Notes under the pieces: model-generated | What the model saw: only the letters and a program-made list of their open reading frames with translations | The model's database searches: none | Told to the model about the DNA's origin: nothing | Made by a program: the position numbers and the translations under genes | Shown here: positions 38,730 to 64,000 of the stretch, one piece after another | Numbering within the stretch: position 1 is the stretch's first letter | Layout: each line of letters begins with the position of its first letter | Virus record (IMG/VR): IMGVR_UViG_3300009537_002640 | Location: 1-64,000 of that record | Direction: 5' to 3' (one strand) | Length of the DNA stretch: 64,000 nucleotides

Positions 38730-39473
38730 TTAATCTCCTGTCACTAAGTCATAGAACTTATCATACTTAGTTGTGTCTAATGATACATCGTTTGGTAAGT
38801 CTACGTCCTTAATATCTGCTCTTGACATAGGCTTAACGTTAACGTTTCGTCTTCTTGCTAGTTCATAAATCGATTTTCTATCTGTACCCACATTGATAAT
38901 ACCAGTTAGCTCTGTGTCTGGAAAACAATGCAGCAAAAAGCTTATCTTGTCAGCTATAACATCAACATAGTCTGCTGAAGAGTACAAATCATCAAATGCC
39001 TTTGGGTATGGCCATGGTGTATTTGGCTTAAAGCTGGTTCTTATTATCAAGTCGTTAGCATCATACCATGCTTCTCCCATAAGCTTTGTGCAGGCATAGT
39101 AGTTTATGGGCCGCGTTCTATCTGTCTCTTTATATATTCCCTTGTCTCCAGGATAAACATAATCAGTGGAGATATATATCACAGGAAGCCCATATGTTCT
39201 GGCCCAACGCTTTACATTCATAGCGCCCTCTACATTTATCCTTACCGCCTGGAGCCTTCCCTCTTCAGTTTCTGCCCCAGGTACATTTGTATAGGCGGCA
39301 CAATGCACTATACCCCTGATTCGATGATAATTGCTTACCAAACTCTCAGGCGCATGTCTCAATAATACATCAGCATCATCGCTGCTGGGAGCTAAATAAC
39401 TGATGCCGTGTTCTGGAGCAATCTTTTGTAATTCGGTTCCTAGCACTCCGGAACCACCAGTCATAAAGTACAT
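38730..39473 (-). CDS. rmlD: dTDP-4-dehydrorhamnose reductase-like SDR
   Basis: TGGSGVLG, VHCAAYTNV, YISTDYVY, PINYYACTKLMGE. Confidence 0.88.
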   Translation of the reverse strand: MYFMTGGSGVLGTELQKIAPEHGISYLAPSSDDADVLLRHAPESLVSNYHRIRGIVHCAAYTNVPGAETEEGRLQAVRINVEGAMNVKRWARTYGLPVIYISTDYVYPGDKGIYKETDRTRPINYYACTKLMGEAWYDANDLIIRTSFKPNTPWPYPKAFDDLYSSADYVDVIADKISFLLHCFPDTELTGIINVGTDRKSIYELARRRNVNVKPMSRADIKDVDLPNDVSLDTTKYDKFYDLVTGD

Positions 39474-39643
39474 CTTCCATACTTCCTGAAGAAATCAAAA
39501 ATCTTCCTTGCTTGCTCATTAAACACAACAGCGGTATCAAGATAATCGCGCACAGCAATAGTGGCAGACTCGATAGATTGCTTTTGAGCTAATAGAGCCA
39601 CGTAAGTAAACCTAATCTCATTTTGAACGCCAGAACCACCCAT
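39461..39643 (-). CDS. Possible small hypothetical protein
   Basis: Fills the gap between rmlB and rmlD and overlaps both. Confidence 0.4.
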   Translation of the reverse strand: MGGSGVQNEIRFTYVALLAQKQSIESATIAVRDYLDTAVVFNEQARKIFDFFRKYGRCTL

Positions 39644-40613
39644 TTGCTTTGTACCATCCTATTGTGTGTGCTAGAGCCTCTTCAAAAGAATATAGGGGCT
39701 TCCAGCCAGTGTGTTCAGTAATCTTAGAGCAATCTACAGAATACCTTCTATCATGTCCGGGCCTGTCTTTAACATAGGTAAGCAGCTCTTTGCCACCCAT
39801 TATGTCAAAAATAGCCTCTAAAACTTCTACATTTTGTTTTTCGCATCCAGAACTAATATTGTATGTCTCGCCCACTACACCTTTTTTAACCAGGGCTACT
39901 AATGCACCAAAGTTATCCTTCACATATATCCACTCTCGACAGTTCTTTCCATCCCCATATAGCGGGATGCTTTTTCCGGTCAAGATATTTGTGATGGTTT
40001 TTGGAATGAACTTTTCTACATGTTGGCGAGGCCCATAGTTATTAGAGCAGCGAGTGGTAATTACGGGCAAGTTGTGGGTTATGTAATACGAATAGCCCAA
40101 TAGGTCGGCTGATGCTTTGGTGCTAGAGTATGGGCTTCTGGGTTGTAGGGGGTCAGTTTCTAATGAACTACCTTCCTCAACAGACCCATATACCTCATCG
40201 GTGCTTATGTTGATAAACTTCTGAGGGGTGTGCACGTGCAATGCTGCTTCTAACATACTATGAGTGCCTAAGACGTTGGTTTTAACGAACTCATCTGCAC
40301 TATTTATGGAATTATCCACATGAGATTCAGCAGCACCGTGTATCACTATATCGGGCTTTTCCATCTCGAAAACTTTATTGACAAAATGCTTATCACATAC
40401 ATCGCCCAGATAAAACTTGTGACGCTTGTTGAAGATATCACTATTGTGAGATATGTTGTATCGAGAGCCAGCATAAGTCAGCTTATCTATACTAACCAAA
40501 TCCCACTTAGTTTCTTGTAAAGCATATATGATAAAGTTGGAGAATATGAACCCGCAACTTCCTGTAACTAAAACTTTCATTCTTCTTCCTCGCATAAAAA
40601 CTTCTCTATCCAT
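39618..40613 (-). CDS. rmlB: dTDP-glucose 4,6-dehydratase (probable start ATG 40580)
   Basis: VTGSCGFI, DKLTYAG, HGAAESHVDNS, ISTDEVYG, PRSPYSSTKA, NNYGPRQ..EKFIP, DRPGHDRRYS. Confidence 0.95.
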   Translation of the reverse strand: MDREVFMRGRRMKVLVTGSCGFIFSNFIIYALQETKWDLVSIDKLTYAGSRYNISHNSDIFNKRHKFYLGDVCDKHFVNKVFEMEKPDIVIHGAAESHVDNSINSADEFVKTNVLGTHSMLEAALHVHTPQKFINISTDEVYGSVEEGSSLETDPLQPRSPYSSTKASADLLGYSYYITHNLPVITTRCSNNYGPRQHVEKFIPKTITNILTGKSIPLYGDGKNCREWIYVKDNFGALVALVKKGVVGETYNISSGCEKQNVEVLEAIFDIMGGKELLTYVKDRPGHDRRYSVDCSKITEHTGWKPLYSFEEALAHTIGWYKANGWFWRSK

Positions 40614-40825
40614 GTAACATACTGTGGCTTTTTCACAGGCGGCAATGACATTTTTAGAGTAGCTGGAGCAACATTGCTATTTAGCACCTTACTACGAAAC
40701 TCATCGTATTCTTTATAGAAACCTACAAGCTCTGAAACCTGTACTCTAATTCTATCTGGCTTCAGTAGAGCTTTGTATATCCACTTAAGTTCTCTTTTTA
40801 CTGGTATTCTTTTACTTGTCATCAA
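40577..40825 (-). CDS. Hypothetical protein
   Basis: ORF whose stop overlaps the rmlB start (ATGA). Confidence 0.6.
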   Translation of the reverse strand: MMTSKRIPVKRELKWIYKALLKPDRIRVQVSELVGFYKEYDEFRSKVLNSNVAPATLKMSLPPVKKPQYVTWIEKFLCEEEE

Positions 40826-41801
40826 AAACTATAGACCTAAAAGTATCGATTTCTTGAGCAGACACTTTTGCTTCCTTAGCACCATGCATATTACACTCTG
40901 CATAACGCTGAATGGAACCACCAGCATCTCCCCAGTATCCATTAACCATCTTATACGCCAGCTTGCCTTGCTTAGCGTAATAATCATTAACACTACTGAT
41001 TTCTAACTCGCCTCTTTCACTTGGGCTTGTTGTGTCGATAGTATTAAAAACATCATAGTCGAACATGTAAAGACCCACAACAGCTAAGTCACTCGCAGGA
41101 TTCTCTGGCTTCTCTACAATCTCCACTACCTTTTCATTCTCCACTTGAGCTACGCCATACGCCCTTGGGTTGTCTACATGCTTCAGCCACACACAAGCTT
41201 TGGTGTTTTCGTCTAGCTTAACCTGGTTGTCTATAGCACCAATATCGAATATATTGTCGCCCAAAATACACACTATCTCATCACCAGGTCTAGCAAAATC
41301 CTTAGCAAGATATAATGCTTCGGATACACCGCCCGCCCCTTCTTGAATCTTGTATGAAAAATCCATACCAAACTCTTTACCACTACCAAGCATTTTCATA
41401 GTAGCATTTGTGCCTTCACGGTCAGTAACCACTAAGGCTCGTTTAATACCAAAGTGCTGAAGGGTCTTTACTGGATAGAATATCATCGGAACTAGACCAA
41501 CAGGCAGGGTGTGTTTGTTCTGATACATAGTTAGCGGATACAGGCGTGTACCCTTTCCACCACAAAGTATAACACCAACCCTATCGTCTCTTCCAAAACT
41601 CTGCACCTTGGTTGCTATCTTAAAGCAATTACGACATCTTGTAACTAGGTTGGACAGGTGCCATGTTAATCTTCCCGCTCGTGGAACTAAAGGCTCTACT
41701 ATAAGGTCGTTTACCTCGTCTCCTGTAGTACCACAATGTCTGCATCGATGAGCATCTCTTTCTAAACATAATGCTTTCGCGTCATTTATACTATAACTCA
41801 T
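40812..41801 (-). CDS. rmlA: Glucose-1-phosphate thymidylyltransferase-like nucleotidyltransferase fused to an N-terminal degenerate HNH/Zn domain
   Basis: ILCGGKGTRLYPLT...NKH, LGDNIF, PRAYGVA, VEKP, AVVGLY, PSERGELEI. N-terminus has CRHCG...NLVTRCRNC. Confidence 0.88.
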   Translation of the reverse strand: MSYSINDAKALCLERDAHRCRHCGTTGDEVNDLIVEPLVPRAGRLTWHLSNLVTRCRNCFKIATKVQSFGRDDRVGVILCGGKGTRLYPLTMYQNKHTLPVGLVPMIFYPVKTLQHFGIKRALVVTDREGTNATMKMLGSGKEFGMDFSYKIQEGAGGVSEALYLAKDFARPGDEIVCILGDNIFDIGAIDNQVKLDENTKACVWLKHVDNPRAYGVAQVENEKVVEIVEKPENPASDLAVVGLYMFDYDVFNTIDTTSPSERGELEISSVNDYYAKQGKLAYKMVNGYWGDAGGSIQRYAECNMHGAKEAKVSAQEIDTFRSIVFDDK

Positions 41802-41802
41802 T

Positions 41803-42699
41803 CTACACCGCCTTATTACTTAATCCCAAGTCTATGGCATCTACTCTGCGTATATCCATCATTTGGGTATTCCTAATGCCTATCTTACCCAGTTTATTAA
41901 AGGCATTATCCAATACGTATATGTGCCCTGTGCGACGATTTCTGTTTTTTCTGATAGGGCTGATTCCTGAACTTCCTACCAAAATAAAATCCGATGATAC
42001 TGCCAATCCTCTTGTAAAGGATTTTTCATCGCACTCAAATACCACCTTTCCATTACACAATAACGTTCCTTCTTCCGAATTACAAATCAGCTCTTTTTCG
42101 TCGTCCTTATAGAAGTTATGAGCGCTAGAGCAATCAGTAAGTATCGATTCGCCTAGATTATGAAAAGTCTTGTCGTATACAAATACTTCGCTTTTCTTTC
42201 CAGTTTTGAAAGTCTCATTATGTGCCAAAACATAAGCCTTATCATCCGTGGCAAAAATAGAGTTCATATGACAATATTCTCGTCTAGGGGTCAGCCAACT
42301 AGCAAAATTGCTGAAACCCAAGACTTTATCGCTTAAATACGGCTCTCTAAAGGTCAATATACGATTCTCAAGCGTATCAGCAACTACCAGTTCATTACCA
42401 ATGAAGTCTATTTGATGTATGGCTTTACTCAAACCATCTATCCGCACTCTTAAATTATACCCCTTTTGATCTCTAATGTTAAACGATACCACGAAGCCTT
42501 TTTCATTATCTTGTGCGAATACCCACCACTCATCCTTATACTTAGTAATACCATAAGCCAGCGGAACACTTAGTATTTTCTTAAACTCTGTGCCATCGAA
42601 GTATAATATCCCATTACTCGTGGTTGAAACTAAAAAGTTAATAGGAGGGATATAACCATCTACATCAAACTTGGTAAAGCTCGAATTATCTAGCTCCAT
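41803..42699 (-). CDS. Beta-propeller-like hypothetical protein
   Basis: Short beta-strand repeats (HQIDF, CHMNSIF, SAHNF, FTRGLAV). Confidence 0.6.
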   Translation of the reverse strand: MELDNSSFTKFDVDGYIPPINFLVSTTSNGILYFDGTEFKKILSVPLAYGITKYKDEWWVFAQDNEKGFVVSFNIRDQKGYNLRVRIDGLSKAIHQIDFIGNELVVADTLENRILTFREPYLSDKVLGFSNFASWLTPRREYCHMNSIFATDDKAYVLAHNETFKTGKKSEVFVYDKTFHNLGESILTDCSSAHNFYKDDEKELICNSEEGTLLCNGKVVFECDEKSFTRGLAVSSDFILVGSSGISPIRKNRNRRTGHIYVLDNAFNKLGKIGIRNTQMMDIRRVDAIDLGLSNKAV

Positions 42700-43016
42700 T
42701 AGCTTGCCTCTATAACCACCTCGTCTTCAACAAGCTTAGTTCCTGTCTCTAAAATTGTAGCATCGCCTCTAACAGCTACAAATCCATGCATAACCTTAGG
42801 CGGTATGTGTATCTCTGTACCCTCATTGAGCAGCTTGCTTTGCCCCTCTATCTTAGCCTGAACTATTCCTTGCAAAACAAATATGGTCTTCTCTCGCACT
42901 TTATGGTACAAGTAAGGAGTCTTCTCTCCCTCTTTGATAACAAACACGCGACTTGAGTAGTTATCTCTGTCGGCACATACTATCTCGTGTCCCCATAAAT
43001 GCTTCTTGGTTTCCAT
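42699..43016 (-). CDS. Cupin-domain protein (sugar isomerase-like)
   Basis: HLWGHE, YH...EKT.FVLQG, IPPKVMH. Confidence 0.8.
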   Translation of the reverse strand: METKKHLWGHEIVCADRDNYSSRVFVIKEGEKTPYLYHKVREKTIFVLQGIVQAKIEGQSKLLNEGTEIHIPPKVMHGFVAVRGDATILETGTKLVEDEVVIEAS

Positions 43017-43888
43017 TATTCATCCTCGTCTTCTCTACTAACGGCGCTTGGAATCTCTTCCCAGTCTTTACTTGGTCTATCTTCCAAGTTCTGTTCCCAT
43101 GATGCCTCAAGTAACATAGGGTCTACACCACGGTTTCTAGCAAAAGCTATAAGTGCGTTTACATCTTTAGGGAAACATGCACCGGAATATCCTCTTTGCC
43201 CATCCCAGCCTGGCACGTTAGCATGTGAACGACCTATACGACCATCCGATAGTATCATATCTCGTACTTCATCAAAGTCTAGCCCTAATCCTTGGCATAG
43301 CTCATATATAAAGTTGAAGTAGGATATCTTGACAGCAAAGAAACAATTTGCTCCGTATTTGGTCAACTCTGCTGCCTCCCAACCGCAACGATAAATGGGA
43401 GTAGAGTTTCCAAACCTATAGCGATAGATTTCTTCCATTTTATCGCCTACCCATTGTTCCTCTGCACCTATGATAATTCTGGATGCGCAAATGAAATCTA
43501 GCCTGTTGTTTCTGGCAGTCAAAAATTCTGGATTCATAACAAAGTTCAGATTATCGTACTTGTTGGCAAACTGTCGTGTCGAGCCCGGGACAACCGTAGA
43601 CTTAATTACAACTATCTTCTTGTCTTCAGGTTTAGCCAACTCATTAATATTGGCAAGATTCTCATCTATTATGCTCAGGTCTATAGCCCCAGTATTCATA
43701 TTCATGGGCGTGGGTAGACCAATCCATATCACATCAGCATGGTCTACCACATCCTCGATACTGTCATAATCCATAAACTTGTCATGAATCTTAATATCGG
43801 CATGTAGTCCAAAGCCATGAGCAATGGCAGTTCCTAAAAACCCATACCCCACTAAACCAAAATTGTATTTCTTTACATCAACTGTCAT
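43016..43888 (-). CDS. ugd: UDP-glucose/GDP-mannose dehydrogenase family (short phage type)
   Basis: GYGFLG, GLPTP, IKSTVVPG, NPEFL, AELTKYGAN, GYSGACFPKD. Confidence 0.9.
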   Translation of the reverse strand: MTVDVKKYNFGLVGYGFLGTAIAHGFGLHADIKIHDKFMDYDSIEDVVDHADVIWIGLPTPMNMNTGAIDLSIIDENLANINELAKPEDKKIVVIKSTVVPGSTRQFANKYDNLNFVMNPEFLTARNNRLDFICASRIIIGAEEQWVGDKMEEIYRYRFGNSTPIYRCGWEAAELTKYGANCFFAVKISYFNFIYELCQGLGLDFDEVRDMILSDGRIGRSHANVPGWDGQRGYSGACFPKDVNALIAFARNRGVDPMLLEASWEQNLEDRPSKDWEEIPSAVSREDEDE

Positions 43889-43891
43889 TAC

Positions 43892-44125: not shown

Positions 44126-44126
44126 T

Positions 44127-44447
44127 TTATGCCTCCCTAAGAGTTTTATTTCGTTTTTCTACCTCTTCTTTAGCATCTTCCAATGTTCCAAAAACATTTT
44201 CTTCATAGCACCAATCTATAATGTCCTCATTACTATCTACAAGCGAGTAATGATAACCTTGGTCGTCTTGACTCACCCTATTGATCATAAGGATGTCTGG
44301 ATGAACTGCATATCTAGTATCTGTCTTGTGTTTTCCTGTTACTGGCACAGCATAAATCAAATAGGCCGATGCGCCTATCTTATGCTTACTATCATTTCTT
44401 TGCATGTTTACGCACCTCATTTCACTGGGCACCCCGATAGCCACCAC
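44127..44447 (-). CDS. Hypothetical protein
   Basis: Co-directional ORF that fills the gap. Confidence 0.6.
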   Translation of the reverse strand: MVAIGVPSEMRCVNMQRNDSKHKIGASAYLIYAVPVTGKHKTDTRYAVHPDILMINRVSQDDQGYHYSLVDSNEDIIDWCYEENVFGTLEDAKEEVEKRNKTLREA

Positions 44448-45376
44448 TCGGAGGTTAGCTTCATTCCTTCATCAAACTTTATGGTGGGATTATAGCCTAA
44501 AACTTTAACCGCCTTACTGATATCTGCGTGAGATTTTCTCGGGTCTCCTAATCTTGGCGGCGCGTTTTTGCGTTTCAGTGGAGTTTTAAGCAAACTCTGA
44601 ATTGCATCAAAAACATCATTTACGCTGTTATGCTCGCCGCAAGCAATATTAAACCTATCGCCGACAAAACGCTGAGTGCTAGTCGCAGCCAAAATGTTTG
44701 CTTGTACCACATTGTCCACATAACAAAAATCCCTCGACTGTCCCCCATCACCATCTACACGGCACTCTGTTCCAGTCATTCCCGCCTCGAAGAAAGCAGG
44801 TATCACTGTGGCGTATGCAGAATTAGCACGCTGATACTTTCCAAACACATTGAAGTATAGCAAGCTCACCGTATCCAACCCATGAAGTTCGCTGTAAAGC
44901 CTACAGTACTCTGCTCCAGTTTGTTTATGTAGAGCGTAAGGAGACTTTGGTGATGGTGGTGCTGTCTCCGGAGTAGGAAACTGAGCTACCCCGCCATATA
45001 CAGAACTAGAGCAGCTAAATACAACTCGCTTCACACCAGCCTGTCTAGCCGCCTCCAACACACTAAGGGTGCCATGAGTATTAGCAAAGTCTGCCGCGAG
45101 TGGTTCATCTATAGAGAACGATACTCTTGGAAGAGCTGCCAAATGAAACACAACATCGCACCCATGAAAAGCTTGTACTAATGCCTCGGTGTCAGTGATA
45201 TCCAACTTAGTAAACATGTAATGACCTGGCAATTCCATAACACGAATAGGGTCTGCCATTTCATCAAAACCAGTGGATAGATTATCAACACCTACCACAC
45301 ACCAGCCTTTCTTCAGGCAACCCTCTACTAAGTTAGAGCCTATAAATCCAGCACTACCAGTTATTGCTACTTTCAT
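44417..45376 (-). CDS. NAD-dependent nucleotide-sugar epimerase/dehydratase (WbpP/GalE-like)
   Basis: TGSAGFIGSNL, FHLAA, SPYALHK, YFNVFG, SAYATVIP, RDFCYVDNVV. Confidence 0.92.
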   Translation of the reverse strand: MKVAITGSAGFIGSNLVEGCLKKGWCVVGVDNLSTGFDEMADPIRVMELPGHYMFTKLDITDTEALVQAFHGCDVVFHLAALPRVSFSIDEPLAADFANTHGTLSVLEAARQAGVKRVVFSCSSSVYGGVAQFPTPETAPPSPKSPYALHKQTGAEYCRLYSELHGLDTVSLLYFNVFGKYQRANSAYATVIPAFFEAGMTGTECRVDGDGGQSRDFCYVDNVVQANILAATSTQRFVGDRFNIACGEHNSVNDVFDAIQSLLKTPLKRKNAPPRLGDPRKSHADISKAVKVLGYNPTIKFDEGMKLTSEWWLSGCPVK

Positions 45377-56330: not shown

Positions 56331-57494
56331 TTAAACCCTTATTAGTTCTTTTATAGCTTGTAGTGCTCTCTTGTGGTGTTGCCCATCAAACGTTAAGCCC
56401 AAATCAAACATATGCTTATTTTGATTTTGTAGCTGCACTGCGTTGTCTGAATTAACTGCTGTGAGAATAATCTCTTCAAACACATCTTGGCTATCTGCAT
56501 GATATGCACAATCGTTCTTAATGGTATCCAGATTGTCGTTTCCTCCAGCAAATACATTATCTGCCACCCTAACTATAACAAGTGGCTTATTTGCTAAACA
56601 CGCCTCAATTTCTACAGTGGACCTTCCTGCCAGAACTATAACATCGGTGGCAGCAATAATAGGATAAGGATCACCAAAGGGCGCGACGAACTTAACATAA
56701 GGACTTTCTTTCAAAGACATAAATTCGTCTATAATCTCTACTGCCCAAGCTTCGCCTGACTTGGCCTTGATATCAATAAAGCTAAATGTATTTTCTTTTT
56801 TAGGTTTTACCACTAACAACCAGTTGTTTTTTTCTGCCAGTTTGGCCAATTTAATAACAGACAAATAAAAATCTACAGAGTGCGCTATGAAATCGCTTCG
56901 GCCATACTTGTGTCCAAAGATAGTTACAATCTTATTAGCCTGAGAGTTTTCTAACAAAGCCCTTCTACACTCATTACTTCGTTGTACTCTGTCATATAGT
57001 ACATCAAATTGTGGTAGGGCATTTAACACAATCTTCTCTGAGGGTACATTGGCATTGTTCATAAGCAAAGTTCTAAAATTATGTATGCCTCCCAGTAATA
57101 AATCAAAATTAGCCCAAGTTTCAGAGAATGATCGCTTTACATTAGCTGGGCTTGCGTCCCAAACTCCGTGACCAACATATACAATTTTCATACCATATTT
57201 TTTCATCTTAGTATGCCAAGTCCCAGAATTATGACACTGAACCACCACATTTGGCTTTTGATTCTTAAGAGAAAATTTGAAATGATAATCTATGTCATAT
57301 TTATAATGAGGCAATTGCAACCCTTTAGAAGAAATAAAGTTGGGTGTACATGCAAATTGCTTGATACCCTTCTCAGGCTTAAATGACTCGAAGACCCTAA
57401 CATGCTCTCTTTTCATAAAGTGGTACATTATGCGTTTCTGTTTTTCCACCTTTTTCTGTTCTGTCAACGTTGTGGCTTTCAATTTTTTGCCCAT
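56331..57494 (-). CDS. GT-B fold transferase (CDP-glycerol phosphotransferase/KpsS-like)
   Basis: VGHG, ALPQFD, VVKPK, TDVIVLAGRSTVEIEACLANKPLV. Confidence 0.7.
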   Translation of the reverse strand: MGKKLKATTLTEQKKVEKQKRIMYHFMKREHVRVFESFKPEKGIKQFACTPNFISSKGLQLPHYKYDIDYHFKFSLKNQKPNVVVQCHNSGTWHTKMKKYGMKIVYVGHGVWDASPANVKRSFSETWANFDLLLGGIHNFRTLLMNNANVPSEKIVLNALPQFDVLYDRVQRSNECRRALLENSQANKIVTIFGHKYGRSDFIAHSVDFYLSVIKLAKLAEKNNWLLVVKPKKENTFSFIDIKAKSGEAWAVEIIDEFMSLKESPYVKFVAPFGDPYPIIAATDVIVLAGRSTVEIEACLANKPLVIVRVADNVFAGGNDNLDTIKNDCAYHADSQDVFEEIILTAVNSDNAVQLQNQNKHMFDLGLTFDGQHHKRALQAIKELIRV

Positions 57495-57509: not shown

Positions 57510-58187
57510 TTACACTTTTACAACCACTAACTCTCTCGCCCCATTAGTTTGTACTTCCTCTGGCAATGGAATTACTTGTGGGTCGTAGCCCAAATCCTTA
57601 TATATCGATACTAAATCAGGATTCCATTGCACCTGGTCTGACACTTTGTAGGTTGGCTTCATGTGCTTTGGCCCAGCAGCAACCTCATTATTTCCTAGTT
57701 GTTCTAGATGCATTACATACTTAAATGCAGCAGGAACTATCTGAACCTCTATCACATTTCGCATTGTTTCGGGCGGAACATGTATTAGCACACCAGAAGT
57801 AAATATAATGTCCGCCTCCCAGTTCACAAAGTCTAAATCATGCAAGTCTTCACATAGCAACCTAACATCTGAACCTAGTTTTTCTTGGGCGAATTTAACT
57901 GCCTTAGGGTTCACTTCTACGCCACTCACCTGTTTGTCTGGAAAGGCTTCCCTAATGTATCGTAAGTTTCTGCCAGCAAAGAAACCTACCTCACCTATAG
58001 AATCAAATTCATAATTTCTAAGTTGTTCCACAAACCACTTAGAGCGCTTGGTTGCTGGAGGCGAGTCCCAATACGACTGAATAATCTTTAAGTCTTTTCC
58101 TGCCCAATGTTGAGCCTGTGTTTTCTTATCTACCATTACACTCTCCCTTAATAGCTTCACATATTCTTTCGCACGCATGACCATCAA
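57510..58187 (-). CDS. Class I SAM methyltransferase (similar to pseudaminic-acid-associated methylases)
   Basis: EVGFFAGRNL, GVEVNPKAV, DIIFTSGVLIHVPP. Confidence 0.82.
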   Translation of the reverse strand: MMVMRAKEYVKLLRESVMVDKKTQAQHWAGKDLKIIQSYWDSPPATKRSKWFVEQLRNYEFDSIGEVGFFAGRNLRYIREAFPDKQVSGVEVNPKAVKFAQEKLGSDVRLLCEDLHDLDFVNWEADIIFTSGVLIHVPPETMRNVIEVQIVPAAFKYVMHLEQLGNNEVAAGPKHMKPTYKVSDQVQWNPDLVSIYKDLGYDPQVIPLPEEVQTNGARELVVVKV

Positions 58188-59208
58188 TATCGCATAGGTA
58201 GTGATTAACTAAACCTACGGTATCACAATCTATAGGATTAGACAAAATATCCAGCAATCCTTTTTGATCGTAGGCTACTGGCAAATACTGGTGATAATCA
58301 GGTAAACCATCAAAATCCCTGGATTCGCCAAATAAAATATATACGATGGGCTTATTGAGTATTGCCGCCTCTAATAACATAGTACTGGCGAACCCCGCAA
58401 CAACATCTGAGTGCACCAACAATTCTCGTGCCACTTGAGTAGATGATTCCCATATATCTGGGATAATCTTAATATCAACGCTTGGGTTGTCGAGCCTGGC
58501 CTTCATTACATCAGATACATACATATCGTATTTGCTATAGCTTTTCCAGGTTTGAGGATGAACTTTAATCACTATCTGGTGATTGCCCGTGCTTTTAGCA
58601 AAATGCTCCAGAGCTAATATTGAGTCGTCCCTTACTTTATCTATGTTGACGTCTACAATTTTTCCATTTGACTCTTGAGAAAATAGAGGCGGATAGTCGG
58701 GAAAGAATATCCATTTTCTAGATAGTTCTAAACCATACTTGTTCGCTACCTCTTCTCTAGATTGGTAGGAGTTATCCATATACAACTCAAATCTTGGGTA
58801 GCCTGTTATATATGTGGTAGTTAGGTCTTCCCAAAAATTGGCGTAATTTTGTCCTGGAGCAAATACTGCATCTGGCGTAAAAAAGTACTCTCCGTCTAAC
58901 TTATATTTCGGATGTCTAAACATCGCGCTCTCATGTGCACCGAACTTAAATGGTTCTCGGGGCAAAAGAAATATTTTTAACCCCTGCCCTCTAAGATGTT
59001 GTAGCGTTCGCCTAATAGGTTTTTCCCACACACTGGTTGTAATAGCAAACTTATACTTGCTGTTCACTCGTATGTTCTGTTTAGCTATACGAGATGCTTT
59101 AGTGGGCGGAAAGTCCATCTTAACCTCGAACTTATCTGGGTTCCAAAAAATCGATGGGTCTATATCTATTCCCCAAACTCTAGGATCTAAATATAGCCCA
59201 TGTAACAT
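58126..59208 (-). CDS. GT-B fold transferase (CDP-glycerol phosphotransferase/KpsS-like)
   Basis: TGYPRFE, IKVHP, SDVVAGFASTMLLEAAILNKPIV. Confidence 0.72.
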   Translation of the reverse strand: MLHGLYLDPRVWGIDIDPSIFWNPDKFEVKMDFPPTKASRIAKQNIRVNSKYKFAITTSVWEKPIRRTLQHLRGQGLKIFLLPREPFKFGAHESAMFRHPKYKLDGEYFFTPDAVFAPGQNYANFWEDLTTTYITGYPRFELYMDNSYQSREEVANKYGLELSRKWIFFPDYPPLFSQESNGKIVDVNIDKVRDDSILALEHFAKSTGNHQIVIKVHPQTWKSYSKYDMYVSDVMKARLDNPSVDIKIIPDIWESSTQVARELLVHSDVVAGFASTMLLEAAILNKPIVYILFGESRDFDGLPDYHQYLPVAYDQKGLLDILSNPIDCDTVGLVNHYLCDIDGHACERICEAIKGECNGR

Positions 59209-59855: not shown

Positions 59856-59856
59856 A

Positions 59857-60564
59857 TCATACCACCTTCTGCATCAGCCTGGAATACTTAACCAAATCTG
59901 CTAGTTCATCTGGAGTTATACTACAGATGTGGTCAAAGCCAGGAGTTGCCTTAGAGAGAGTAAAATGTTTCTCTATAAGCTTTGCTCCTCTTGCTACAGC
60001 TACCAATGATGCCTCTATCCCAAGTGTATGGTCAGAGAACCCATAGTAAAAATCTCCAAATACTGGAGGAAAGTTTAGACTCTTATACTCGGTAGGATAT
60101 TCTGATACGCAATAGAGATACTTTACATTATCAGGAGACTTATCTAATGCCACTGAATTAAATCCCAGAGACATATAGCATTCTTTTCCGGTTGCTACCA
60201 TCTTCTCAGCTAATGGCCTATTAAGCTTAGACACACGACTTGCTATTTTGTGTCGCTTAACACCCAAGTCTTCCATCCATTGTAGCCGCTCTTCATCAAA
60301 AACGCTACACATGAACTCGATGCCTTCTTCATCGCACCAGTCTTTAAGCTGTGCGAATTGCTCTTTGTTAAATTCTAGAGGTTTTACACCAGCATGAATT
60401 TCTGGGTTTGGGTCTTCTCCGTCAGGCCCAAAGAGAGCATCCACCGAATAAGCCTGAAACTTAGCAGCATCAGCTCCAGCAATTGCAGCCTGACGGATTA
60501 ATTCATGCGCCAGGTGTATATTGCCATTATGGTTAATTCCAATCTCAGCAATTATAAACACCAT
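59857..60564 (-). CDS. neuB: Nonulosonic acid synthase (NeuB/PseI/SpsE family), no C-terminal AFP domain
   Basis: IIAEIGINHNG, GADAAKFQ, HKIAS, YCVSEYPT, GFSDHT, IEKHFTL, DHICS. Confidence 0.9.
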   Translation of the reverse strand: MVFIIAEIGINHNGNIHLAHELIRQAAIAGADAAKFQAYSVDALFGPDGEDPNPEIHAGVKPLEFNKEQFAQLKDWCDEEGIEFMCSVFDEERLQWMEDLGVKRHKIASRVSKLNRPLAEKMVATGKECYMSLGFNSVALDKSPDNVKYLYCVSEYPTEYKSLNFPPVFGDFYYGFSDHTLGIEASLVAVARGAKLIEKHFTLSKATPGFDHICSITPDELADLVKYSRLMQKVV

Positions 60565-60574: not shown

Positions 60575-61300
60575 TCATCTTAATTTCAGTTCTGTTTTCA
60601 CATCACGGTAATCTATGTCGTCCTCATCGCAGGCTTTATCATAAGCCTCTTCGTCGAGTTCATATAGCTCATCCATATTCATACCGTCAGACTTTCTGAT
60701 TTCTTCTTCGTAGCCCACAATAGCCGTTGTGGCATCTTTCCAGCCAAACAACCTATCGTATCTACCATCAGCGCTAGCTAAATCTACAGGGTGCTTCATA
60801 GGCTCTGTAAAATCATAAAATCTAACTTCGTATGGACAAGCCCAATAACAACCTTCAACCGCGATGATGGTATTGTCGGGAGATAACTTAACATCTGCCC
60901 AACAGAAACCAAAACCTTTCTGCGCTGATTCTGGTAGGTAATCCAGACGCTTAGGGTCATCTAATCGAATTATTGTTTGTCCCTGATAGTTCTCACCACA
61001 CAGTAAGTAATCATGCCCATCAGGATGTCCTATCGCCCAGCACTTCCAAAAGCTATGATAGTTTCTATTAACTACCGCTATCACTTCTTTTGTCTTCTTA
61101 TTACGAACTGTGCCACGAGTATAGTTCCAGGTCCCCTTGCCAGTCTTGAAACTCTCGATGGCTAACTCGTATGTGCCACAAGGCGAATCTTCAAACTCTG
61201 TGCTTTCTAAGTTCTTCTTGCTATAGAACTTGCTCTTCTTAAATTCACTTGCATATTCTTTGATGCTTGTAATAAGCTTCTTTGCTAATACCTAAGTCAT
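60575..61300 (-). CDS. Hypothetical protein; the best-supported start is followed by an in-frame TAG at codon 3 (nonsense allele or amber readthrough)
   Basis: AAGGAG-7nt-ATG(61300) ACT TAG, then 69 sense codons with no ATG/GTG/TTG (...SPCGTYELAIESFKTGKGTWNYTRG...) continuing in frame into the track ORF 60575-61084. Confidence 0.65.
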
Positions 61301-61302
61301 TG

Positions 61303-61518
61303 TTAAACTCCTTTGATTTCATCTTCATAGATTGGGGTTGTGATGGGCTCAAAGTCTTCTGCCTCAAGCTTACTATATTCCTCTATAGTTATCTCGCCCC
61401 TAAGTAATTTACCATACCATTTCATAGCTTGAAAATTGGTCTGATATCCTATAACTTTGCGTTCTTGGTTCCGCTTACGACGCTTGGTGAATCTCTTCCA
61501 CCATGTTTCTCGAACCAT
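61303..61518 (-). CDS. Small hypothetical protein
   Basis: GGAGG SD before ATG; overlaps the GNAT gene by 70 nt. Confidence 0.55.
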   Translation of the reverse strand: MVRETWWKRFTKRRKRNQERKVIGYQTNFQAMKWYGKLLRGEITIEEYSKLEAEDFEPITTPIYEDEIKGV

Positions 61519-62093
61519 TCATCCTCCAATACACTAAGCATTGTAGAGTCTATATAGGTGCCATTGGTGAACTGGTTGTGTCGCAATTTGCCATCAACCT
61601 TCATACCAAGCGGCCCAGTGTAAACCCCTAATGCTACGTTGTTATCATATACTTCTGCCCATATCTTATGCAGGTTCATTTCTCTAAACCCAAAGTCAAA
61701 TAGCAGCGTAAGAGCCTCTTTACCTAATCCCTTGCCTCTTGCCTCGGGACTTAAAAAGATACCAAACTCTGCAGAACGTAAACGCCAGTCTACATAGTGT
61801 AAACCGCAGCAGCCAACTAAATCTGGTGCAGGGTTTTGCTTGCCAGTTCCGTAGTCTGTCCAACCCTGTAATGGTGGCGTTTGTACTGGCAGATTCTCAT
61901 GAATCTCAAAGTATACATGATTGTCCGCCATGTTGTTGCCACGGTTTTCGTACCACCACTGCTGTCGTGCCTTACTGATATCCTTCCATTCCCTAAAGTA
62001 TTTGCGCATCTCAGGATCATTCCTTTGCTCGCGCATCCACTCTACATTGGAAGGGTCTATCTCTTTCAGATATACTTTATCACCAACTATCAT
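61449..62093 (-). CDS. GNAT/RimJ-like N-acetyltransferase (PseH-like)
   Basis: WMREQRNDPEMRKYF, VGCCGL, AEFGIFL...RGKGLG, LHKIWAEV. Confidence 0.85.
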   Translation of the reverse strand: MIVGDKVYLKEIDPSNVEWMREQRNDPEMRKYFREWKDISKARQQWWYENRGNNMADNHVYFEIHENLPVQTPPLQGWTDYGTGKQNPAPDLVGCCGLHYVDWRLRSAEFGIFLSPEARGKGLGKEALTLLFDFGFREMNLHKIWAEVYDNNVALGVYTGPLGMKVDGKLRHNQFTNGTYIDSTMLSVLEDEWFEKHGGRDSPSVVSGTKNAKL

Positions 62094-62593
62094 CAGTTAG
62101 TCCTCTTGCTCGTTTTCTTTTTACGAGCGGGCTTCTTAGACGTCTTTTTCTTAGTAGTGGCCTGAGCTATCACCTTATCCTCTTCCGACATAACTATAGC
62201 TGGAGCTGTTTGCTCTTGCGGCAAATTCACCACTATAGGAGTTGTGCCCTTGCTTACAACATGAGTATCTTTATTGTCTTCATCTGAACCATATGCGGAA
62301 GATGGGTCATTAACAAACTCTATCACTATGCACTCAGTCTCGGCCTCTACTTGATGCATAAAACCTGGAGGAATTGATAGAGATGTTCCTGGTTCAAAAG
62401 GAATGCCCTTTATCTGCCCATTCTTAATTACTCTAATGGTAGCTTTTCCGCCCAGAAGATAAAGCACTTTCGTTAGCCTGGTATGAAACACCATGTCGGT
62501 TTTCTTACCTGCTTCTATCTTGTGTACGGCACCACCAACATTACGTGCCTTGTCCCAGACAACTGCCCTGGAACCATAACCTATCTCTGACAT
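62093..62593 (-). CDS. Cupin-domain protein with basic tail
   Basis: FH...KVLYLLGG, SIPPGFMHQVEA; C-terminal KKTSKKPARKKK. Confidence 0.72.
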   Translation of the reverse strand: MSEIGYGSRAVVWDKARNVGGAVHKIEAGKKTDMVFHTRLTKVLYLLGGKATIRVIKNGQIKGIPFEPGTSLSIPPGFMHQVEAETECIVIEFVNDPSSAYGSDEDNKDTHVVSKGTTPIVVNLPQEQTAPAIVMSEEDKVIAQATTKKKTSKKPARKKKTSKRTN

Positions 62594-62603
62594 TGTTTTC
62601 TCC

Positions 62604-63434
62604 TTAATATTTTCTTAGCTTCTCTATGATGGGCTGTTCACTTACATACACAGTCTTAATCCCATCACCCAATATAGTCTCAACCTCACGAGCATCACGG
62701 CACAACTTACGTAAACCGGTTGGCTCCAATGATGCTGCCTGGTCACTACCATACATTGTACGGTCTAAAGTAATGTGTCGTTCAACTACGGCTGCACCTA
62801 GAGATACAGCGAGCAAAGTTGGTAATAGTCCCTTTTCATGCCCGCTGAAGCCGACGCCCTTTGAATCTGGGTATCTTTCGGTGAGAGTCTTAACAACACG
62901 AATATTAGACTCCCTGATGTCGGTTGGGTATGTAGAAGTGCAATGCATAACTGTAAAAGGACACTTGTGCTTCCTAAATATTTCTACTGCATGGTCAACC
63001 TGTTCTAGGGTACTCATACCCGTAGATATATAGGTGTGCTTTCCTTCTTGAGCTACAGTCTCTAATAGCTCATCGTATGTCAAGAGCGCTGAAGCAATCT
63101 TATTAAACTCTAGGTCATACTGCTGTAAGAACTTCTGGCTTTCTAAATCCCAGGCGGATGCGCTCCATGCTATACCTTTCTCTTTACAGTATCTATCTAT
63201 CTCGTCGTATTCTTCTTTGCCAAACTCTAAGCCTTCTTTCTGCTGCCTGTTGATTGTTCCCCAAGGCGATTCGCGAGACTTATCTAGCTCTTCCTTTGTA
63301 TACACTAAATCAATAGTGCGCTTTTGAAACTTAACAGCATCACATCCTGCATCTACTGCCAGGTCGATTAGCTTCTTGGCAATTCCCAAGTCACCATTGT
63401 GATTAATGCCTATCTCGGCTATAATATAAACCAT
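62604..63434 (-). CDS. neuB: Second nonulosonic acid synthase (NeuB/SpsE family)
   Basis: IIAEIGINHNGD, GCDAVKFQKRT, KIASA, ISTGMST, MHCTSTYP, GFSGHE, ERHITLDRTMYGSDQAASLEP. Confidence 0.93.
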   Translation of the reverse strand: MVYIIAEIGINHNGDLGIAKKLIDLAVDAGCDAVKFQKRTIDLVYTKEELDKSRESPWGTINRQQKEGLEFGKEEYDEIDRYCKEKGIAWSASAWDLESQKFLQQYDLEFNKIASALLTYDELLETVAQEGKHTYISTGMSTLEQVDHAVEIFRKHKCPFTVMHCTSTYPTDIRESNIRVVKTLTERYPDSKGVGFSGHEKGLLPTLLAVSLGAAVVERHITLDRTMYGSDQAASLEPTGLRKLCRDAREVETILGDGIKTVYVSEQPIIEKLRKY

Positions 63435-63438
63435 AACT

Positions 63439-64000
63439 TTACCCCTTATTACAAACTAAAAAGATTGTATCGTGTTTTCTAATGGTTTTAAGAAATGCGG
63501 AATACGCCGCGTTCATAAAACTCAAGCTCTTAAATTTACCTGGCTTACCTCTTAGCAGCCAATACAAATGATTATCGAATGAATATCTCTGTAACCTTAT
63601 TTCTTTCTCTACTAAAAACCTCTCATTGTTTAGTAATTTGGTCAGCGATTTTGGTGTGAAGTATGAACAATGGGCGTTCTGAAAATAGAAGCTCTTGTAC
63701 TTCTCTAGCCCCACCAAGGCGTCATTGAGATTTGGAACCTCCACTATCAGACGACCATTATGACCTAACACATCATAAATATGATGCAAGAAAGGGGCTG
63801 GCTCAGGAATATGCTCTAATACATGAAAGAGGGTTACTGTATCTACCTCTTCCTTCCAATCAGAAATATTGCATAGCCTAACGTCCAGTCCTCTTTCTTG
63901 TGCGCTTCTAACTCGTGCCTCGCTAATATCTACGCCTATAGCTCCATCAATCAAACCAACAAAGTTAGAATAACCAGTGCCAACATCTAAAAGCTTGAGG
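63439..64000 (-). CDS. Class I SAM methyltransferase, 5' end beyond the window
   Basis: The frame stays open to the window edge (LKLLDVGTGYSNF...). Motifs FHVLEHIPEP and LIVEVPN. Confidence 0.85.
   Translation of the reverse strand, partial: LKLLDVGTGYSNFVGLIDGAIGVDISEARVRSAQERGLDVRLCNISDWKEEVDTVTLFHVLEHIPEPAPFLHHIYDVLGHNGRLIVEVPNLNDALVGLEKYKSFYFQNAHCSYFTPKSLTKLLNNERFLVEKEIRLQRYSFDNHLYWLLRGKPGKFKSLSFMNAAYSAFLKTIRKHDTIFLVCNKG

What the first reader, a model, noticed from the sequence alone, without database searches (positions are those of the whole stretch)
38730..64000. A 25 kb+ virus-encoded glycan biosynthesis locus
The locus holds nucleotide-sugar enzymes (RmlA/B/D, Ugd, epimerase, two cupins), two nonulosonate synthases, a PseH-like GNAT, two GT4, one GT2, three GT-B/KpsS-like transferases, four methyltransferases and a deacetylase, and it continues past the window. 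No flippase, polymerase, Wzc or ABC exporter is visible, unlike cellular capsule or O-antigen loci. This points to cytoplasmic glycosylation of virion proteins (as in Mimiviridae/chloroviruses) or of DNA, rather than an exported polysaccharide.
Basis: partly seen in the sequence, partly recalled or inferred. Interest (0 to 1): 0.72.

Follow-up and report, generated by a model that had tools for sequence, protein, structure and literature searches.

The report
Jumbo phage's 56-kb sugar-coat gene island
An uncultivated jumbo phage devotes about a quarter of its known genome to making rare bacterial sugars, including sialic-acid-like nine-carbon sugars, and attaching them inside the cell with no export machinery, most likely onto its own particle proteins.

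Summary
The window is the first 64 kb of a 206,495-bp IMG/VR phage contig, which is a fragment. It is a contractile-tailed phage whose capsid protein is 53.5% identical to that of Bacillus phage G.

The glycan locus starts at 38,730, right after a tubulin gene. It runs far past the window to contig position 94,945, ending at the tail-fibre and baseplate genes. That is 56 kb and about 48 glycan genes:
- three SAF-less NeuB synthases;
- a Pse-like set (PseB, C, H, G and F-like);
- two CMP-sugar synthetases, GlmS and an RmlA/B/D-like module;
- methyl-, acetyl- and pyruvyl-transferases;
- 16-19 glycosyltransferases, among them four TagF-like GT-B enzymes and a 251-aa "mini-Maf" with a sialyltransferase-like fold.

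No island protein has more than one predicted membrane segment. No Und-P priming transferase, flippase, polymerase or ABC-2 permease was found on the contig, and none except the untested polymerase in two CheckV-complete relatives.

Five relatives carry different glycan genes in the same slot.

Best reading (about 0.5): a self-contained cytoplasmic system that glycosylates virion proteins. Host-surface remodelling through host exporters remains a serious rival. DNA glycosylation is unlikely. The acceptor is not shown.

The parts
38730..39473 (-). RmlD-like NDP-4-keto-6-deoxyhexose reductase. It is short (247 aa) and only the N-terminal half of the RmlD model is matched.
   Evidence: PF04321 at E 1e-34. 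TIGR01214 scores 110 bits, below the 224 cut-off. 47% identical homologue in G002.
39618..40613 (-). dTDP-glucose 4,6-dehydratase (RmlB).
   Evidence: TIGR01181 scores 407 bits, above the 365 cut-off.
40812..41801 (-). RmlA-like sugar-1-phosphate nucleotidyltransferase with an N-terminal Cys-rich extension of about 75 aa.
   Evidence: PF00483 at E 6e-44 over residues 76-306. RmlA models score below their cut-offs. The sequence is shown.
41803..42699 (-). Unknown 298-aa protein with a weak DUF4915 match.
   Evidence: PF16261 at E 2e-4, below the cut-off.
42699..43016 (-). Small cupin (105 aa). It could be a sugar isomerase or epimerase, but this is unresolved.
   Evidence: Cupin_2 at E 7e-8. 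Only generic cupin and KdgF-like PDB matches. No canonical RmlC on the contig.
43016..43888 (-). Short NDP-sugar dehydrogenase-like protein (290 aa). It has the N-terminal and central domains and a GxGxxG motif, but no C-terminal domain.
   Evidence: PF00984 and PF03721. TIGR03026 scores 156 bits, below 189.8. Motif seen. 57% identical homologue in G002.
44417..45376 (-). NDP-sugar 4-epimerase of the TviC/GalE type.
   Evidence: PF01370 at E 2e-57. TviC and GalE models score below their cut-offs.
45384..45683 (-). Thioredoxin. It is embedded in the island, conserved in relatives, and its role is unknown.
   Evidence: PF00085 at E 3e-20. It is also present in the related islands.
45721..46329 (-). 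SAM-dependent methyltransferase.
   Evidence: Methyltransf_11/23/31.
46277..46897 (-). Unknown 206-aa protein.
   Evidence: No Pfam match. Absent from G002.
46894..47937 (-). Saccharopine-dehydrogenase-like oxidoreductase.
   Evidence: PF16653 and PF03435.
47934..48650 (-). DUF2334, a deacetylase-like protein.
   Evidence: PF10096 at E 1e-10.
48604..49446 (-). GT4-type glycosyltransferase (280 aa). It is complete, not split.
   Evidence: PF00534 and PF13692. Full-length 48% identical homologue in G002.
49437..50243 (-). Free-standing LAGLIDADG homing endonuclease. It is an insertion, not a glycan gene.
   Evidence: PF14528. Its homologue in G002 lies elsewhere in that genome.
51093..52133 (-). 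GT4 glycosyltransferase.
   Evidence: PF13692 at E 3e-27.
52480..53999 (-). Insertion holding a macro-domain protein (52480-52953), a 97-aa ORF and an AAA_28 NadR-like kinase (53442-53999). It is probably not glycan-related.
   Evidence: PF01661 and PF13521. No homologues in the G002 island.
54176..55279 (-). GT-B protein of the TagF/epimerase type, with an HP motif at residue 220.
   Evidence: PF04464 at E 3e-4 and PF02350 at E 6e-4, both below their cut-offs. Motif seen.
55373..55978 (-). GT2 glycosyltransferase.
   Evidence: PF00535 at E 4e-29.
56331..57494 (-). GT-B fold protein. It is either a hydrolysing NDP-sugar 2-epimerase (NeuC/LegG-type) or a transferase. Its paralogue lies at contig 67321-68445.
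   Evidence: No Pfam match. AF2 model with pLDDT 93.6. Foldseek top hits are a Rickettsia glycosyltransferase (7MI0), WecB-type UDP-GlcNAc 2-epimerases and TagF/TarL, E 1e-10 to 1e-13. Paralogue found.
57510..58187 (-). Methyltransferase, a paralogue of 59208-59855.
   Evidence: Methyltransf_25/11. Paralogy.
58126..59208 (-). TagF/TagB-like GT-B transferase and a candidate nonulosonic-acid transferase. It is 44% identical to its paralogue at contig 68442-69515.
   Evidence: PF04464 scores 28.2 bits, above the 22.1 cut-off. HP motif at residue 217. Precedent: TagB-like Pse/Leg transferases of Tannerella (PMC5420450).
59208..59855 (-). Methyltransferase.
   Evidence: Methyltransf_25/12/11.
59857..60564 (-). 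NeuB-family nonulosonate synthase 1 (235 aa, no SAF domain).
   Evidence: PF03102 at E 7e-49. TIGR03569 scores 186 bits and PseI 127, both below their cut-offs.
60575..61084 (-). Unknown 169-aa protein.
   Evidence: No Pfam match.
61449..62093 (-). GNAT N-acetyltransferase with weak similarity to PseH.
   Evidence: PF13302 at E 5e-16. TIGR03585 scores 38 bits, below 93.
62093..62593 (-). Cupin with a Lys-rich C-terminal tail.
   Evidence: Cupin_1 at E 2e-4, just below the cut-off. Sequence shown.
62604..63434 (-). NeuB-family nonulosonate synthase 2 (276 aa, no SAF domain).
   Evidence: PF03102 at E 4e-70. The best solved relative is 6NCS, a 290-aa NeuB.
63439..64000 (-). Methyltransferase. 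The gene runs on to contig position 64320. The island then continues to 94,945 outside the window.
   Evidence: Methyltransf_23 at E 1e-15.

Best explanation
The locus is the first 25 kb of a 56-kb phage-encoded glycan factory at contig 38,730-94,945. All its parts appear to be soluble.

Shown by family or fold assignment, it encodes the following.
1. A dTDP-6-deoxyhexose module: RmlA-like, RmlB and an RmlD-like reductase, with no canonical RmlC.
2. An NDP-uronic/amino-sugar module: a dehydrogenase-like protein, a 4-epimerase, GlmS, and DegT and class-III aminotransferases.
3. Up to three CMP-nonulosonic-acid routes:
   - PseB-, PseC-, PseH-, PseG- and PseF-like enzymes.
   - Three NeuB paralogues.
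   - A second CMP-transferase and a HAD phosphatase.
   - Two GT-B epimerase-like paralogues.
4. Tailoring enzymes: at least four methyltransferases, GNAT and hexapeptide acetyltransferases, a pyruvyl transferase and a deacetylase-like protein.
5. 16-19 transferases: 4 GT4, 7 GT2, 4 TagF-like GT-B and a 251-aa Maf/CstII-fold 'mini-Maf'.

Inferred: during infection these enzymes turn host hexose phosphates and UDP-GlcNAc into activated rare sugars. They then build one or more complex glycans, capped by nonulosonic acid and methylated, acetylated or pyruvylated, directly on an acceptor in the cytoplasm. No lipid carrier or export step is used.

The most likely acceptors are the phage's own virion proteins (fibres, baseplate or capsid decoration), whose genes abut the conserved transferase block. 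This would resemble Maf-dependent flagellin glycosylation in bacteria and fibril glycosylation in Megavirinae.

The variable content of the island among relatives suggests diversifying selection on a surface-exposed glycan.
For: Gene content:
- Searches give the family assignments.

The locus lies inside a phage:
- The island sits between tubulin and replication genes on one side and a 940-aa gene, a 2185-aa Laminin_G_3 gene, Baseplate_J and a sheath initiator on the other.
- The major head protein lies at contig 181 kb.

No membrane or export machinery:
- No island protein has more than one predicted membrane segment.
- Bac_transf, Glycos_transf_4, Wzx, Wzy_C and ABC2_membrane are absent from the contig.
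- All but Wzy_C were also searched in six relatives, two of them rated 100% complete by CheckV, and none was found.
- No tyrosine integrase was found on the contig or in those relatives, which argues against lysogenic conversion.

The mini-Maf:
- The AF2 model has pLDDT 93.7.
- The best solved match is the Maf flagellin glycosyltransferase 5MU5 (E 2e-6, probability 1.0, TM 0.60). CstII and other sialyltransferases follow.
- In other metagenomic contigs it always sits beside 2-3 NeuB genes.

TagB-like GT-B enzymes next to nonulosonic-acid genes are genetically implicated Pse/Leg transferases in Tannerella protein O-glycosylation (PMC5420450).

The slot is conserved in G002, G003, G004, G005 and G012:
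- The interval between tubulin and Baseplate_J always holds glycan genes.
- A GT4 homologue always lies directly beside the 940-aa gene.
- Sugar-pathway content differs between relatives.
Against: - No acceptor is identified, and no Ser/Thr-rich mucin-like tract stands out in the structural proteins.
- TagF/TagB-type enzymes classically act on lipid-linked acceptors at the membrane face.
- The contig is a fragment (CheckV estimate 25%) and the host is unknown. Host priming transferases and exporters could therefore be used.
- All Pse-pathway matches fall below the NCBIfam equivalog cut-offs, so the actual sugars are unknown.
- The mini-Maf lacks the N- and C-terminal domains of true Maf proteins.
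- There are no expression, proteomic or chemical data.
Confidence: 0.5

Rival explanations
1. Host-surface remodelling. The phage enzymes build or modify a capsule, LPS, teichoic-acid-like polymer or flagellar/S-layer glycan of the infected cell. They would rely on the host's lipid-carrier priming enzyme and exporters. The aim would be to block superinfection by other phages or to alter the virocell surface.
For: - TagF-like GT-B enzymes and a TagD/RfaE-like nucleotidyltransferase resemble teichoic-acid and ABC-dependent capsule chemistry. In that chemistry the synthetic enzymes are soluble or peripheral and only the exporters are membrane proteins.
- The island follows the tail-fibre genes, which is where seroconversion genes sit in many phages (own knowledge).
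- Large 'LPS gene' clusters in cyanomyoviruses have been interpreted this way (own knowledge).
Against: - No priming enzyme, flippase or ABC-2 permease was found on the contig or in two complete relatives, and no Wzy_C polymerase on the contig.
- No integrase was found.
- A glycan slot is conserved across relatives whose tubulin is only 40-54% identical. This points to a core phage function rather than a recently acquired add-on gene.
- A Maf/CstII-fold transferase suggests protein glycosylation. That said, the protein could be a host flagellin.
Confidence: 0.3
2. DNA hypermodification. The sugars are attached to phage DNA bases to evade restriction.
For: - Phage glycosyltransferases are classically DNA-modifying, and multi-sugar DNA glycans exist (Pyle 2024, cited in PMC12619734).
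- The absence of export genes is compatible with this reading.
Against: - No ThyA-type hydroxymethylase was found on the contig or in six relatives.
- Three nonulosonate synthases, a pyruvyl transferase and 16-19 transferases far exceed any known DNA glycosylation system.
- Maf/CstII and TagF folds have no known DNA substrates.
Confidence: 0.04
3. Not a phage feature. The locus is a cellular capsule or O-antigen locus joined to phage sequence by misassembly, or by a prophage boundary.
For: - IMG/VR labels some relatives 'provirus'.
- The contig has no terminal repeats.
Against: - Phage structural and replication genes flank the island on both sides, with gaps of at most about 360 bp between predicted ORFs and a single coding strand.
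- The same arrangement recurs in at least five independent contigs from different samples.
- GlmS is at most 44% identical to any bacterial genome in the scanned collection.
Confidence: 0.02

Closest known systems
Megavirinae (Mimivirus, Megavirus, Moumouvirus) fibril-glycosylation gene clusters (Notaro et al. 2022, PMC10117803; Chem Rev review PMC9614988)
   Same: - Virus-encoded nucleotide-sugar pathways for rare bacterial-type sugars, together with many glycosyltransferases.
- The genes are clustered and no export machinery is present.
- Cluster content is clade-specific.
   Different: - Those are eukaryote-infecting giant viruses with clusters of 6-33 genes. This one is a tailed phage with about 48 glycan genes in 56 kb.
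- That review mentions no nonulosonic acids, only a predicted Kdo route in CroV and Fadolivirus.
- Virion glycans were shown chemically there. They have not been shown here.
Bacterial flagellin O-glycosylation islands with Pse/Leg pathways and Maf transferases (Campylobacter, Helicobacter, Aeromonas, Magnetospirillum; Maf structure 5MU5)
   Same: - PseB/C/H/G/I/F-like enzymes, extra NeuB paralogues and methyl/acyl tailoring enzymes.
- A Maf-fold transferase.
- No flippase, because glycosylation is cytoplasmic.
   Different: - The phage protein is 251 aa and covers only the central catalytic domain. The solved Maf is 632 aa.
- The PF01973 match is below its cut-off.
- No flagellin gene is involved and the acceptor is unknown.
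TagB-like nonulosonic-acid transferases of Tannerella forsythia (Tomek et al. 2017, PMC5420450)
   Same: - GT-B/TagB-superfamily proteins encoded beside Pse/Leg biosynthesis genes.
- An HP motif is present.
   Different: - The Tannerella enzymes act on a lipid-linked oligosaccharide that is flipped and transferred in the periplasm.
- The D/E-D/E-G motif is seen in only one of the phage proteins.
Mycobacteriophage virion glycosylation (Freeman et al. 2023, cited in PMC12619734; the paper itself is not held)
   Same: Phage-encoded glycosyltransferases decorate capsid and tail-tube subunits in the cytoplasm.
   Different: Those phages carry only a few transferases and use host nucleotide sugars. 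They have no sugar-biosynthesis island and no nonulosonic acids.
Cafeteria roenbergensis virus 38-kb carbohydrate cluster
   Same: A large, bacterial-like glycan cluster in a virus, with a CMP-ulosonic-acid activation step, methyltransferases and glycosyltransferases.
   Different: - It is a eukaryotic virus and the predicted product is Kdo (8-carbon).
- It has 34 ORFs of which few are assignable, and it is unvalidated.

Membership tests
Pseudaminic acid pathway (PseB, C, H, G, I, F) | Each enzyme reaches its NCBIfam equivalog cut-off. | tested here: not met
   Scores against cut-offs:
- PseB 338 against 408.
- PseC 342 against 424.
- PseF 148 against 206.
- PseG 53 against 154.
- PseH 38 against 93.
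- The three NeuB score higher on NeuB_NnaB than on PseI, and all fall below both cut-offs.

A full set exists at family level only. The sugar made is undetermined.
NeuB family (PF03102) nonulosonate synthases | TIM-barrel NeuB domain above the Pfam gathering score. | tested here: met
   Scores are 167, 236 and 221 bits against a cut-off of 22.
NeuB family (PF03102) nonulosonate synthases | C-terminal SAF (antifreeze-like) domain, as in N. meningitidis NeuB. | tested here: not met
   The proteins are 235, 276 and 295 aa. No SAF match exists anywhere on the contig. A solved 290-aa NeuB (6NCS) is the best relative.
Maf (motility-associated factor) flagellin glycosyltransferases | MAF_flag10/MptE-like domain (PF01973) above the gathering score. 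| tested here: not met
   20.5 bits against 34.6. Several homologues carry a precomputed PF01973 hit.
Maf (motility-associated factor) flagellin glycosylyltransferases | Central sialyltransferase-like catalytic fold. | tested here: met
   AF2 model with pLDDT 93.7. Foldseek top hit is 5MU5 at E 2e-6 and TM 0.60, followed by CstII.
Maf (motility-associated factor) flagellin glycosyltransferases | Full three-domain architecture of about 600 aa with acceptor-binding flanking domains. | tested here: not met
   The protein is 251 aa and the target is 632 aa. Coverage of the target gives TM 0.26.
TagF/TagB CDP-glycerol glycerophosphotransferase family (PF04464) | Pfam gathering score reached. | tested here: met
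   58126-59208 scores 28.2 and contig 68442-69515 scores 32.0, against a cut-off of 22.1. 54176-55279 scores 20.4 and fails. Whether the donor is CDP-glycerol or a CMP-nonulosonic acid was not tested.
KpsS/KpsC capsule beta-Kdo transferases (PF05159) | Capsule_synth domain. | tested here: not met
   No PF05159 hit at E 0.01 or better for any island protein.
Cellular Wzx/Wzy-, ABC- or synthase-dependent polysaccharide loci | Priming phosphoglycosyltransferase plus a flippase, polymerase or ABC-2 permease. | tested here: not met
   None found on the contig. Four of the five families were searched in six relatives, two of them complete, and none was found; Wzy_C was not searched there.
dTDP-L-rhamnose pathway (RmlABCD) | All four enzymes present. 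| tested here: not met
   RmlB passes its cut-off. RmlA-like and RmlD-like fall below theirs. No dTDP_sugar_isom (RmlC) exists on the contig.
Virus-encoded autonomous virion-glycosylation clusters (Megavirinae type) | Clustered viral nucleotide-sugar pathways plus glycosyltransferases, with content varying between clades. | tested here: met
Virus-encoded autonomous virion-glycosylation clusters (Megavirinae type) | Glycans shown chemically on virion proteins. | not testable with these tools
   The phage is uncultivated. No sequencing run holding the sequence was listed.
Phage DNA glycosylation systems | Pyrimidine hydroxymethylase (ThyA homologue) that supplies the acceptor base. | tested here: not met
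   PF00303 is absent from the contig and from six relatives. Other acceptor chemistries were not tested.

The most novel reading that the evidence does not exclude
This family of uncultivated jumbo phages coats its virions with complex glycans capped by sialic-acid-like nonulosonic acids. The sugars are made entirely by phage enzymes and attached in the cytoplasm by a minimal Maf-type transferase together with TagF-like transferases.

If so, this would be the first phage I could find described as synthesising nonulosonic acids. Its glycosylation cluster would also be larger than those described for Megavirinae. The interchangeable sugar modules would act as a variable surface 'serotype' for the phage particle.
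Probability: 0.4. Interest if true: 0.85.

Novelty: new variant of a known kind. Interest (0 to 1): 0.72.

Why it matters
Known examples of phage glycobiology are mostly small. They include DNA glucosylation, a few seroconversion genes, and a few transferases that decorate mycobacteriophage capsids. The larger 'LPS gene' clusters of cyanomyoviruses are an exception (own knowledge).

This island has about 48 genes in 56 kb and three nonulosonate synthases. That puts a tailed phage at or beyond the scale of Mimivirus-type autonomous glycosylation.

- NeuB-like genes matched only 3 of 50,697 deposited phage records.
- Full-text searches found no paper on phage-encoded nonulosonic-acid synthesis.

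If the virions are glycosylated, that raises testable questions:
- Do phage particles use sialic-acid-like coats to shield themselves, to avoid sticking to decoys, or to change host range?
- Why is the sugar repertoire swapped between relatives while the transferase block next to the fibre genes is kept?

The island is also a compact source of soluble enzymes for rare sugars. These include SAF-less NeuBs, a 251-aa minimal Maf-fold transferase and several TagF-like transferases.

Tried and rejected
- **Relatives among deposited phages.** Megablast of 20-25 kb pieces against 50,697 phage records found nothing. tblastn with the tubulin and the mini-Maf also found nothing. The PrkA-like kinase hits Thermus and huge phages only, and says nothing about the host.
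- **Host inference.** GlmS is at most 44% identical to any of about 186,000 species genomes, spread over many phyla. There are no tRNAs and no Rfam match. No public sequencing run was listed. The host stays unknown.
- **Split genes.** I suspected that the LAGLIDADG gene split a GT4 and that the dehydrogenase-like gene was a truncated pseudogene. Both ideas were rejected. G002 has full-length collinear homologues, and the dehydrogenase-like protein keeps a GxGxxG motif.
- **Acceptor search.** I looked for Ser/Thr-rich acceptor tracts in the structural proteins and found nothing convincing.
- **Fibre proteins.** The 940-aa and 2185-aa proteins have no relatives among solved structures.
- **'Moraphage' lineage (PMC12619734).** The paper reports four core glycosyltransferase groups but mentions no tubulin, NeuB or sialic acid. 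I could not establish membership.
- **314-aa protein at contig 79370-80314.** It gave only a low-confidence helical-repeat lead.
- **Complex prediction.** I did not use it, because I claim no specific binding pair.

Full report
**What the sequence is.**
The window is bases 1-64,000 of a single 206,495-bp IMG/VR virus record. The record has no terminal repeat. CheckV rates it 'linear' and only about 25% complete, so it is a fragment.

- 172 of 180 ORFs lie on the minus strand. GC is 38-44% and GC skew is negative throughout.
- The contig carries a major head protein (phrog_2522, E 1e-78), Baseplate_J and a contractile-sheath initiator.
- It also carries RNR, PhoH, DnaB- and DnaC-like proteins, a UvsW-like helicase and a TubZ/PhuZ-like tubulin.
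- The nearest cultured relative by capsid protein is Bacillus phage G, at 53.5% identity.
- IMG/VR holds at least 184 related loci. The 80 listed have capsid proteins 65-93% identical, on contigs up to 442 kb.

This is therefore an uncultivated member of a large family of jumbo myoviruses. The host is unknown.

**Checking the observation.**
Two corrections apply.

- The three 'KpsS-like' proteins are GT-B proteins of the TagF/TagB or UDP-GlcNAc-2-epimerase type. None gave a PF05159 (KpsS) hit.
- The interval also holds non-glycan insertions: thioredoxin, a LAGLIDADG endonuclease, a macro domain and an AAA_28 kinase-like gene.

Only RmlB passes an equivalog cut-off. RmlA-like, RmlD-like, the short dehydrogenase-like protein and the epimerase are family-level assignments. 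No canonical RmlC exists on the contig. The product of the 'Rml' module therefore need not be L-rhamnose.

**The locus is much bigger than the window.**
These genes follow directly beyond 64 kb:

- a pyruvyl transferase;
- a PseF-like CMP-sugar synthetase and a HAD phosphatase;
- a 251-aa MptE/Maf-like protein;
- a paralogue of the 56331 GT-B protein, and a TagF-like paralogue (44% identical to 58126-59208);
- a hexapeptide acetyltransferase, a class-III aminotransferase and a second GNAT;
- a TagD/RfaE-II-like nucleotidyltransferase and a second CMP-transferase;
- a PseG-like protein, a third NeuB, GlmS and an SDR;
- a PseC-like DegT aminotransferase;
- a PseB-like dehydratase fused to an N-terminal MerR/excisionase-type HTH;
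- another TagF-like GT-B.

An uninterrupted transferase block then occupies 85,118-94,945: GT4, GT2, GT2, GT2, a 711-aa double GT2, GT2, GT2 and GT4. It is followed at once by a 940-aa protein, a 2185-aa Laminin_G_3 protein, Baseplate_J and the sheath initiator.

The island is thus 56.2 kb, or 27% of the contig. It has about 48 glycan-related genes, including 16-19 transferases.

**Structure-based assignments.**
- **Mini-Maf.** I modelled the 251-aa protein from 27 homologues (pLDDT 93.7). Its best solved match is the Maf flagellin glycosyltransferase of Magnetospirillum (5MU5; E 2e-6, TM 0.60). CstII and other sialyltransferases follow. It is a minimal Maf/GT42-like catalytic domain without Maf's flanking domains.
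- **The Pfam-silent 387-aa protein (56331-57494).** It belongs to a family with 345 representatives in the 50% library. The model has pLDDT 93.6 and a GT-B fold. Its top Foldseek hits are a Rickettsia glycosyltransferase, WecB-type UDP-GlcNAc 2-epimerases and TagF/TarL. It may be a hydrolysing 2-epimerase of the NeuC/LegG type that feeds the extra NeuBs, or it may be a transferase. I could not decide which.
- **The three NeuBs.** They are 33-36% identical to one another. All lack the SAF domain, and none is encoded separately. The best solved relative is a 290-aa NeuB, 6NCS.

**No export route.**
- A hydropathy scan finds no protein with more than one predicted membrane segment between 38.7 and 95 kb.
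- Six-frame HMM searches of the contig find no Bac_transf, Glycos_transf_4, Wzx, Wzy_C or ABC2_membrane, while control genomes score.
- Because the contig is incomplete, I repeated four of these searches (all but Wzy_C) in six relatives, two of them rated 100% complete. All were negative.
- Tyrosine integrase and ThyA-type enzymes are also absent from the contig and from these relatives.

**Comparative evidence.**
G002 (IMGVR_UViG_3300029288_007060, 158 kb) is collinear with this contig over nearly its whole length. It carries the island in the same place. The flanking modules are shared at 45-70% identity, but it has only one NeuB and a shorter middle.

The same pattern holds in G003, G004 and G012 (340-442 kb) and in G005:
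- The interval between tubulin and Baseplate_J is 29-35 kb in G003, G004 and G012, and it holds glycan genes in all four.
- A homologue of the 93,740 GT4 always lies next to the 940-aa gene.
- RmlA/B-like and DegT genes are often present.
- NeuB is present only in G005.

NeuB occurs in 2 of the 22 related contigs of 50 kb or more that I checked. Other metagenomic contigs carrying the mini-Maf show the same neighbourhood with swapped modules. These have 2-3 NeuB plus sulfotransferases, radical-SAM enzymes and a patatin.

The slot is ancient and conserved. Its sugar repertoire is fluid.

**Interpretation.**
The system is soluble. It includes a protein-glycosyltransferase fold, and its conserved transferase block abuts the fibre and baseplate genes. 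No sign of lysogeny was found, and the lineage carries no priming or export genes.

This best fits cytoplasmic glycosylation of phage proteins. The closest mechanistic analogue is Maf-dependent flagellin glycosylation. The closest viral analogue is the Megavirinae fibril-glycosylation clusters (PMC10117803).

Precedent also exists for TagB-like enzymes acting as Pse/Leg transferases (PMC5420450).

I give this reading about 0.5, because the acceptor is entirely inferred.

The main rival (about 0.3) is remodelling of the infected cell's surface using the host's lipid carrier and exporters. TagF-like chemistry and the position after the fibre genes are both compatible with it.

DNA glycosylation is unlikely (about 0.04), and an assembly chimera is very unlikely.

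**Novelty.**
Virus-encoded glycosylation clusters are a known kind, so this is a new variant rather than a new category. It is nonetheless unusual.

- NeuB-like genes matched only 3 of 50,697 phage records. One of those is a Moritella contig, and the other two are an uncultured huge phage and a marine virus recovered from a single-cell genome.
- The mini-Maf matched none of those records.
- The 2022 review of giant-virus glycans mentions no nonulosonic acids.
- My full-text searches found no report of phage-encoded nonulosonic-acid synthesis. The library is limited, so this is not proof of absence.

Noticed in passing
window 37295-38728 (-): A TubZ/PhuZ-like tubulin (PF00091 at E 5e-17, plus the TubZ C-terminal domain) lies directly upstream of the island. 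tblastn at E<=1e-5 finds no match among 50,697 phage records. It is conserved at 40-64% identity in five related IMG/VR contigs.
   Followed up: partly
window 25681-30719 (-): A PrkA-like serine kinase, a SpoVR-like protein and a third protein (phrog_35217) that may be YeaH-like form a three-gene set. The kinase's best phage matches are Thermus phages and huge uncultured phages.
   Followed up: partly
window 1490-12394 and 12897-17939 (-); contig 97952-104509, 136892-143434, 148296-159731: The contig encodes a series of giant proteins of 3634, 1680, 2185, 2180 and 3811 aa. The first has N-terminal similarity to virion structural proteins (phrog_8510). They are candidate fibres and possible glycan acceptors.
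   Followed up: no
window 49437-50243 (-): A free-standing LAGLIDADG homing endonuclease with an N-terminal HTH is inserted between island genes. Its homologue in G002 lies about 75 kb away from that phage's island.
   Followed up: partly
window 52480-53999 (-): A macro-domain protein and an AAA_28 (NadR-like kinase) protein form an insertion specific to this contig. They may be linked to NAD/ADP-ribose metabolism or to counter-defence.
   Followed up: no
L001 17567-18715 (contig 80567-81715, -): The PseB-like dehydratase carries an N-terminal MerR/excisionase-type HTH (PF00376 at E 3e-10). The fusion is conserved at 71% identity in G002. A DNA-binding sugar enzyme could regulate the island itself.
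   Followed up: partly
window 40812-41801 (-), residues 1-75: The RmlA-like enzyme has an N-terminal Cys-rich extension that looks like an HNH or zinc finger. G002 has it too, but G003, G004 and G005 do not.
   Followed up: partly
window 43889-44416: A 528-bp stretch between the epimerase and the dehydrogenase-like gene is absent from G002. It holds only a 106-aa minus-strand ORF and a 223-aa plus-strand ORF, and neither has a Pfam match.
   Followed up: partly
whole contig: The 206 kb contain no tRNA genes, and 96% of ORFs lie on one strand. CheckV completeness estimates are inconsistent among relatives: a 316-kb contig is rated 18% complete and a 158-kb contig 39%. Completeness values should therefore be read with caution.
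   Followed up: no
L192 (ENA ERZ27250004 contig, 51 kb) and L191 (JGI 3300033148 contig, 103 kb): Related islands carry two mini-Maf copies, sulfotransferases, a patatin-like lipase and a B12-binding radical-SAM enzyme beside 2-3 NeuB genes. This implies sulfated or C-methylated variants of the glycan.
   Followed up: partly
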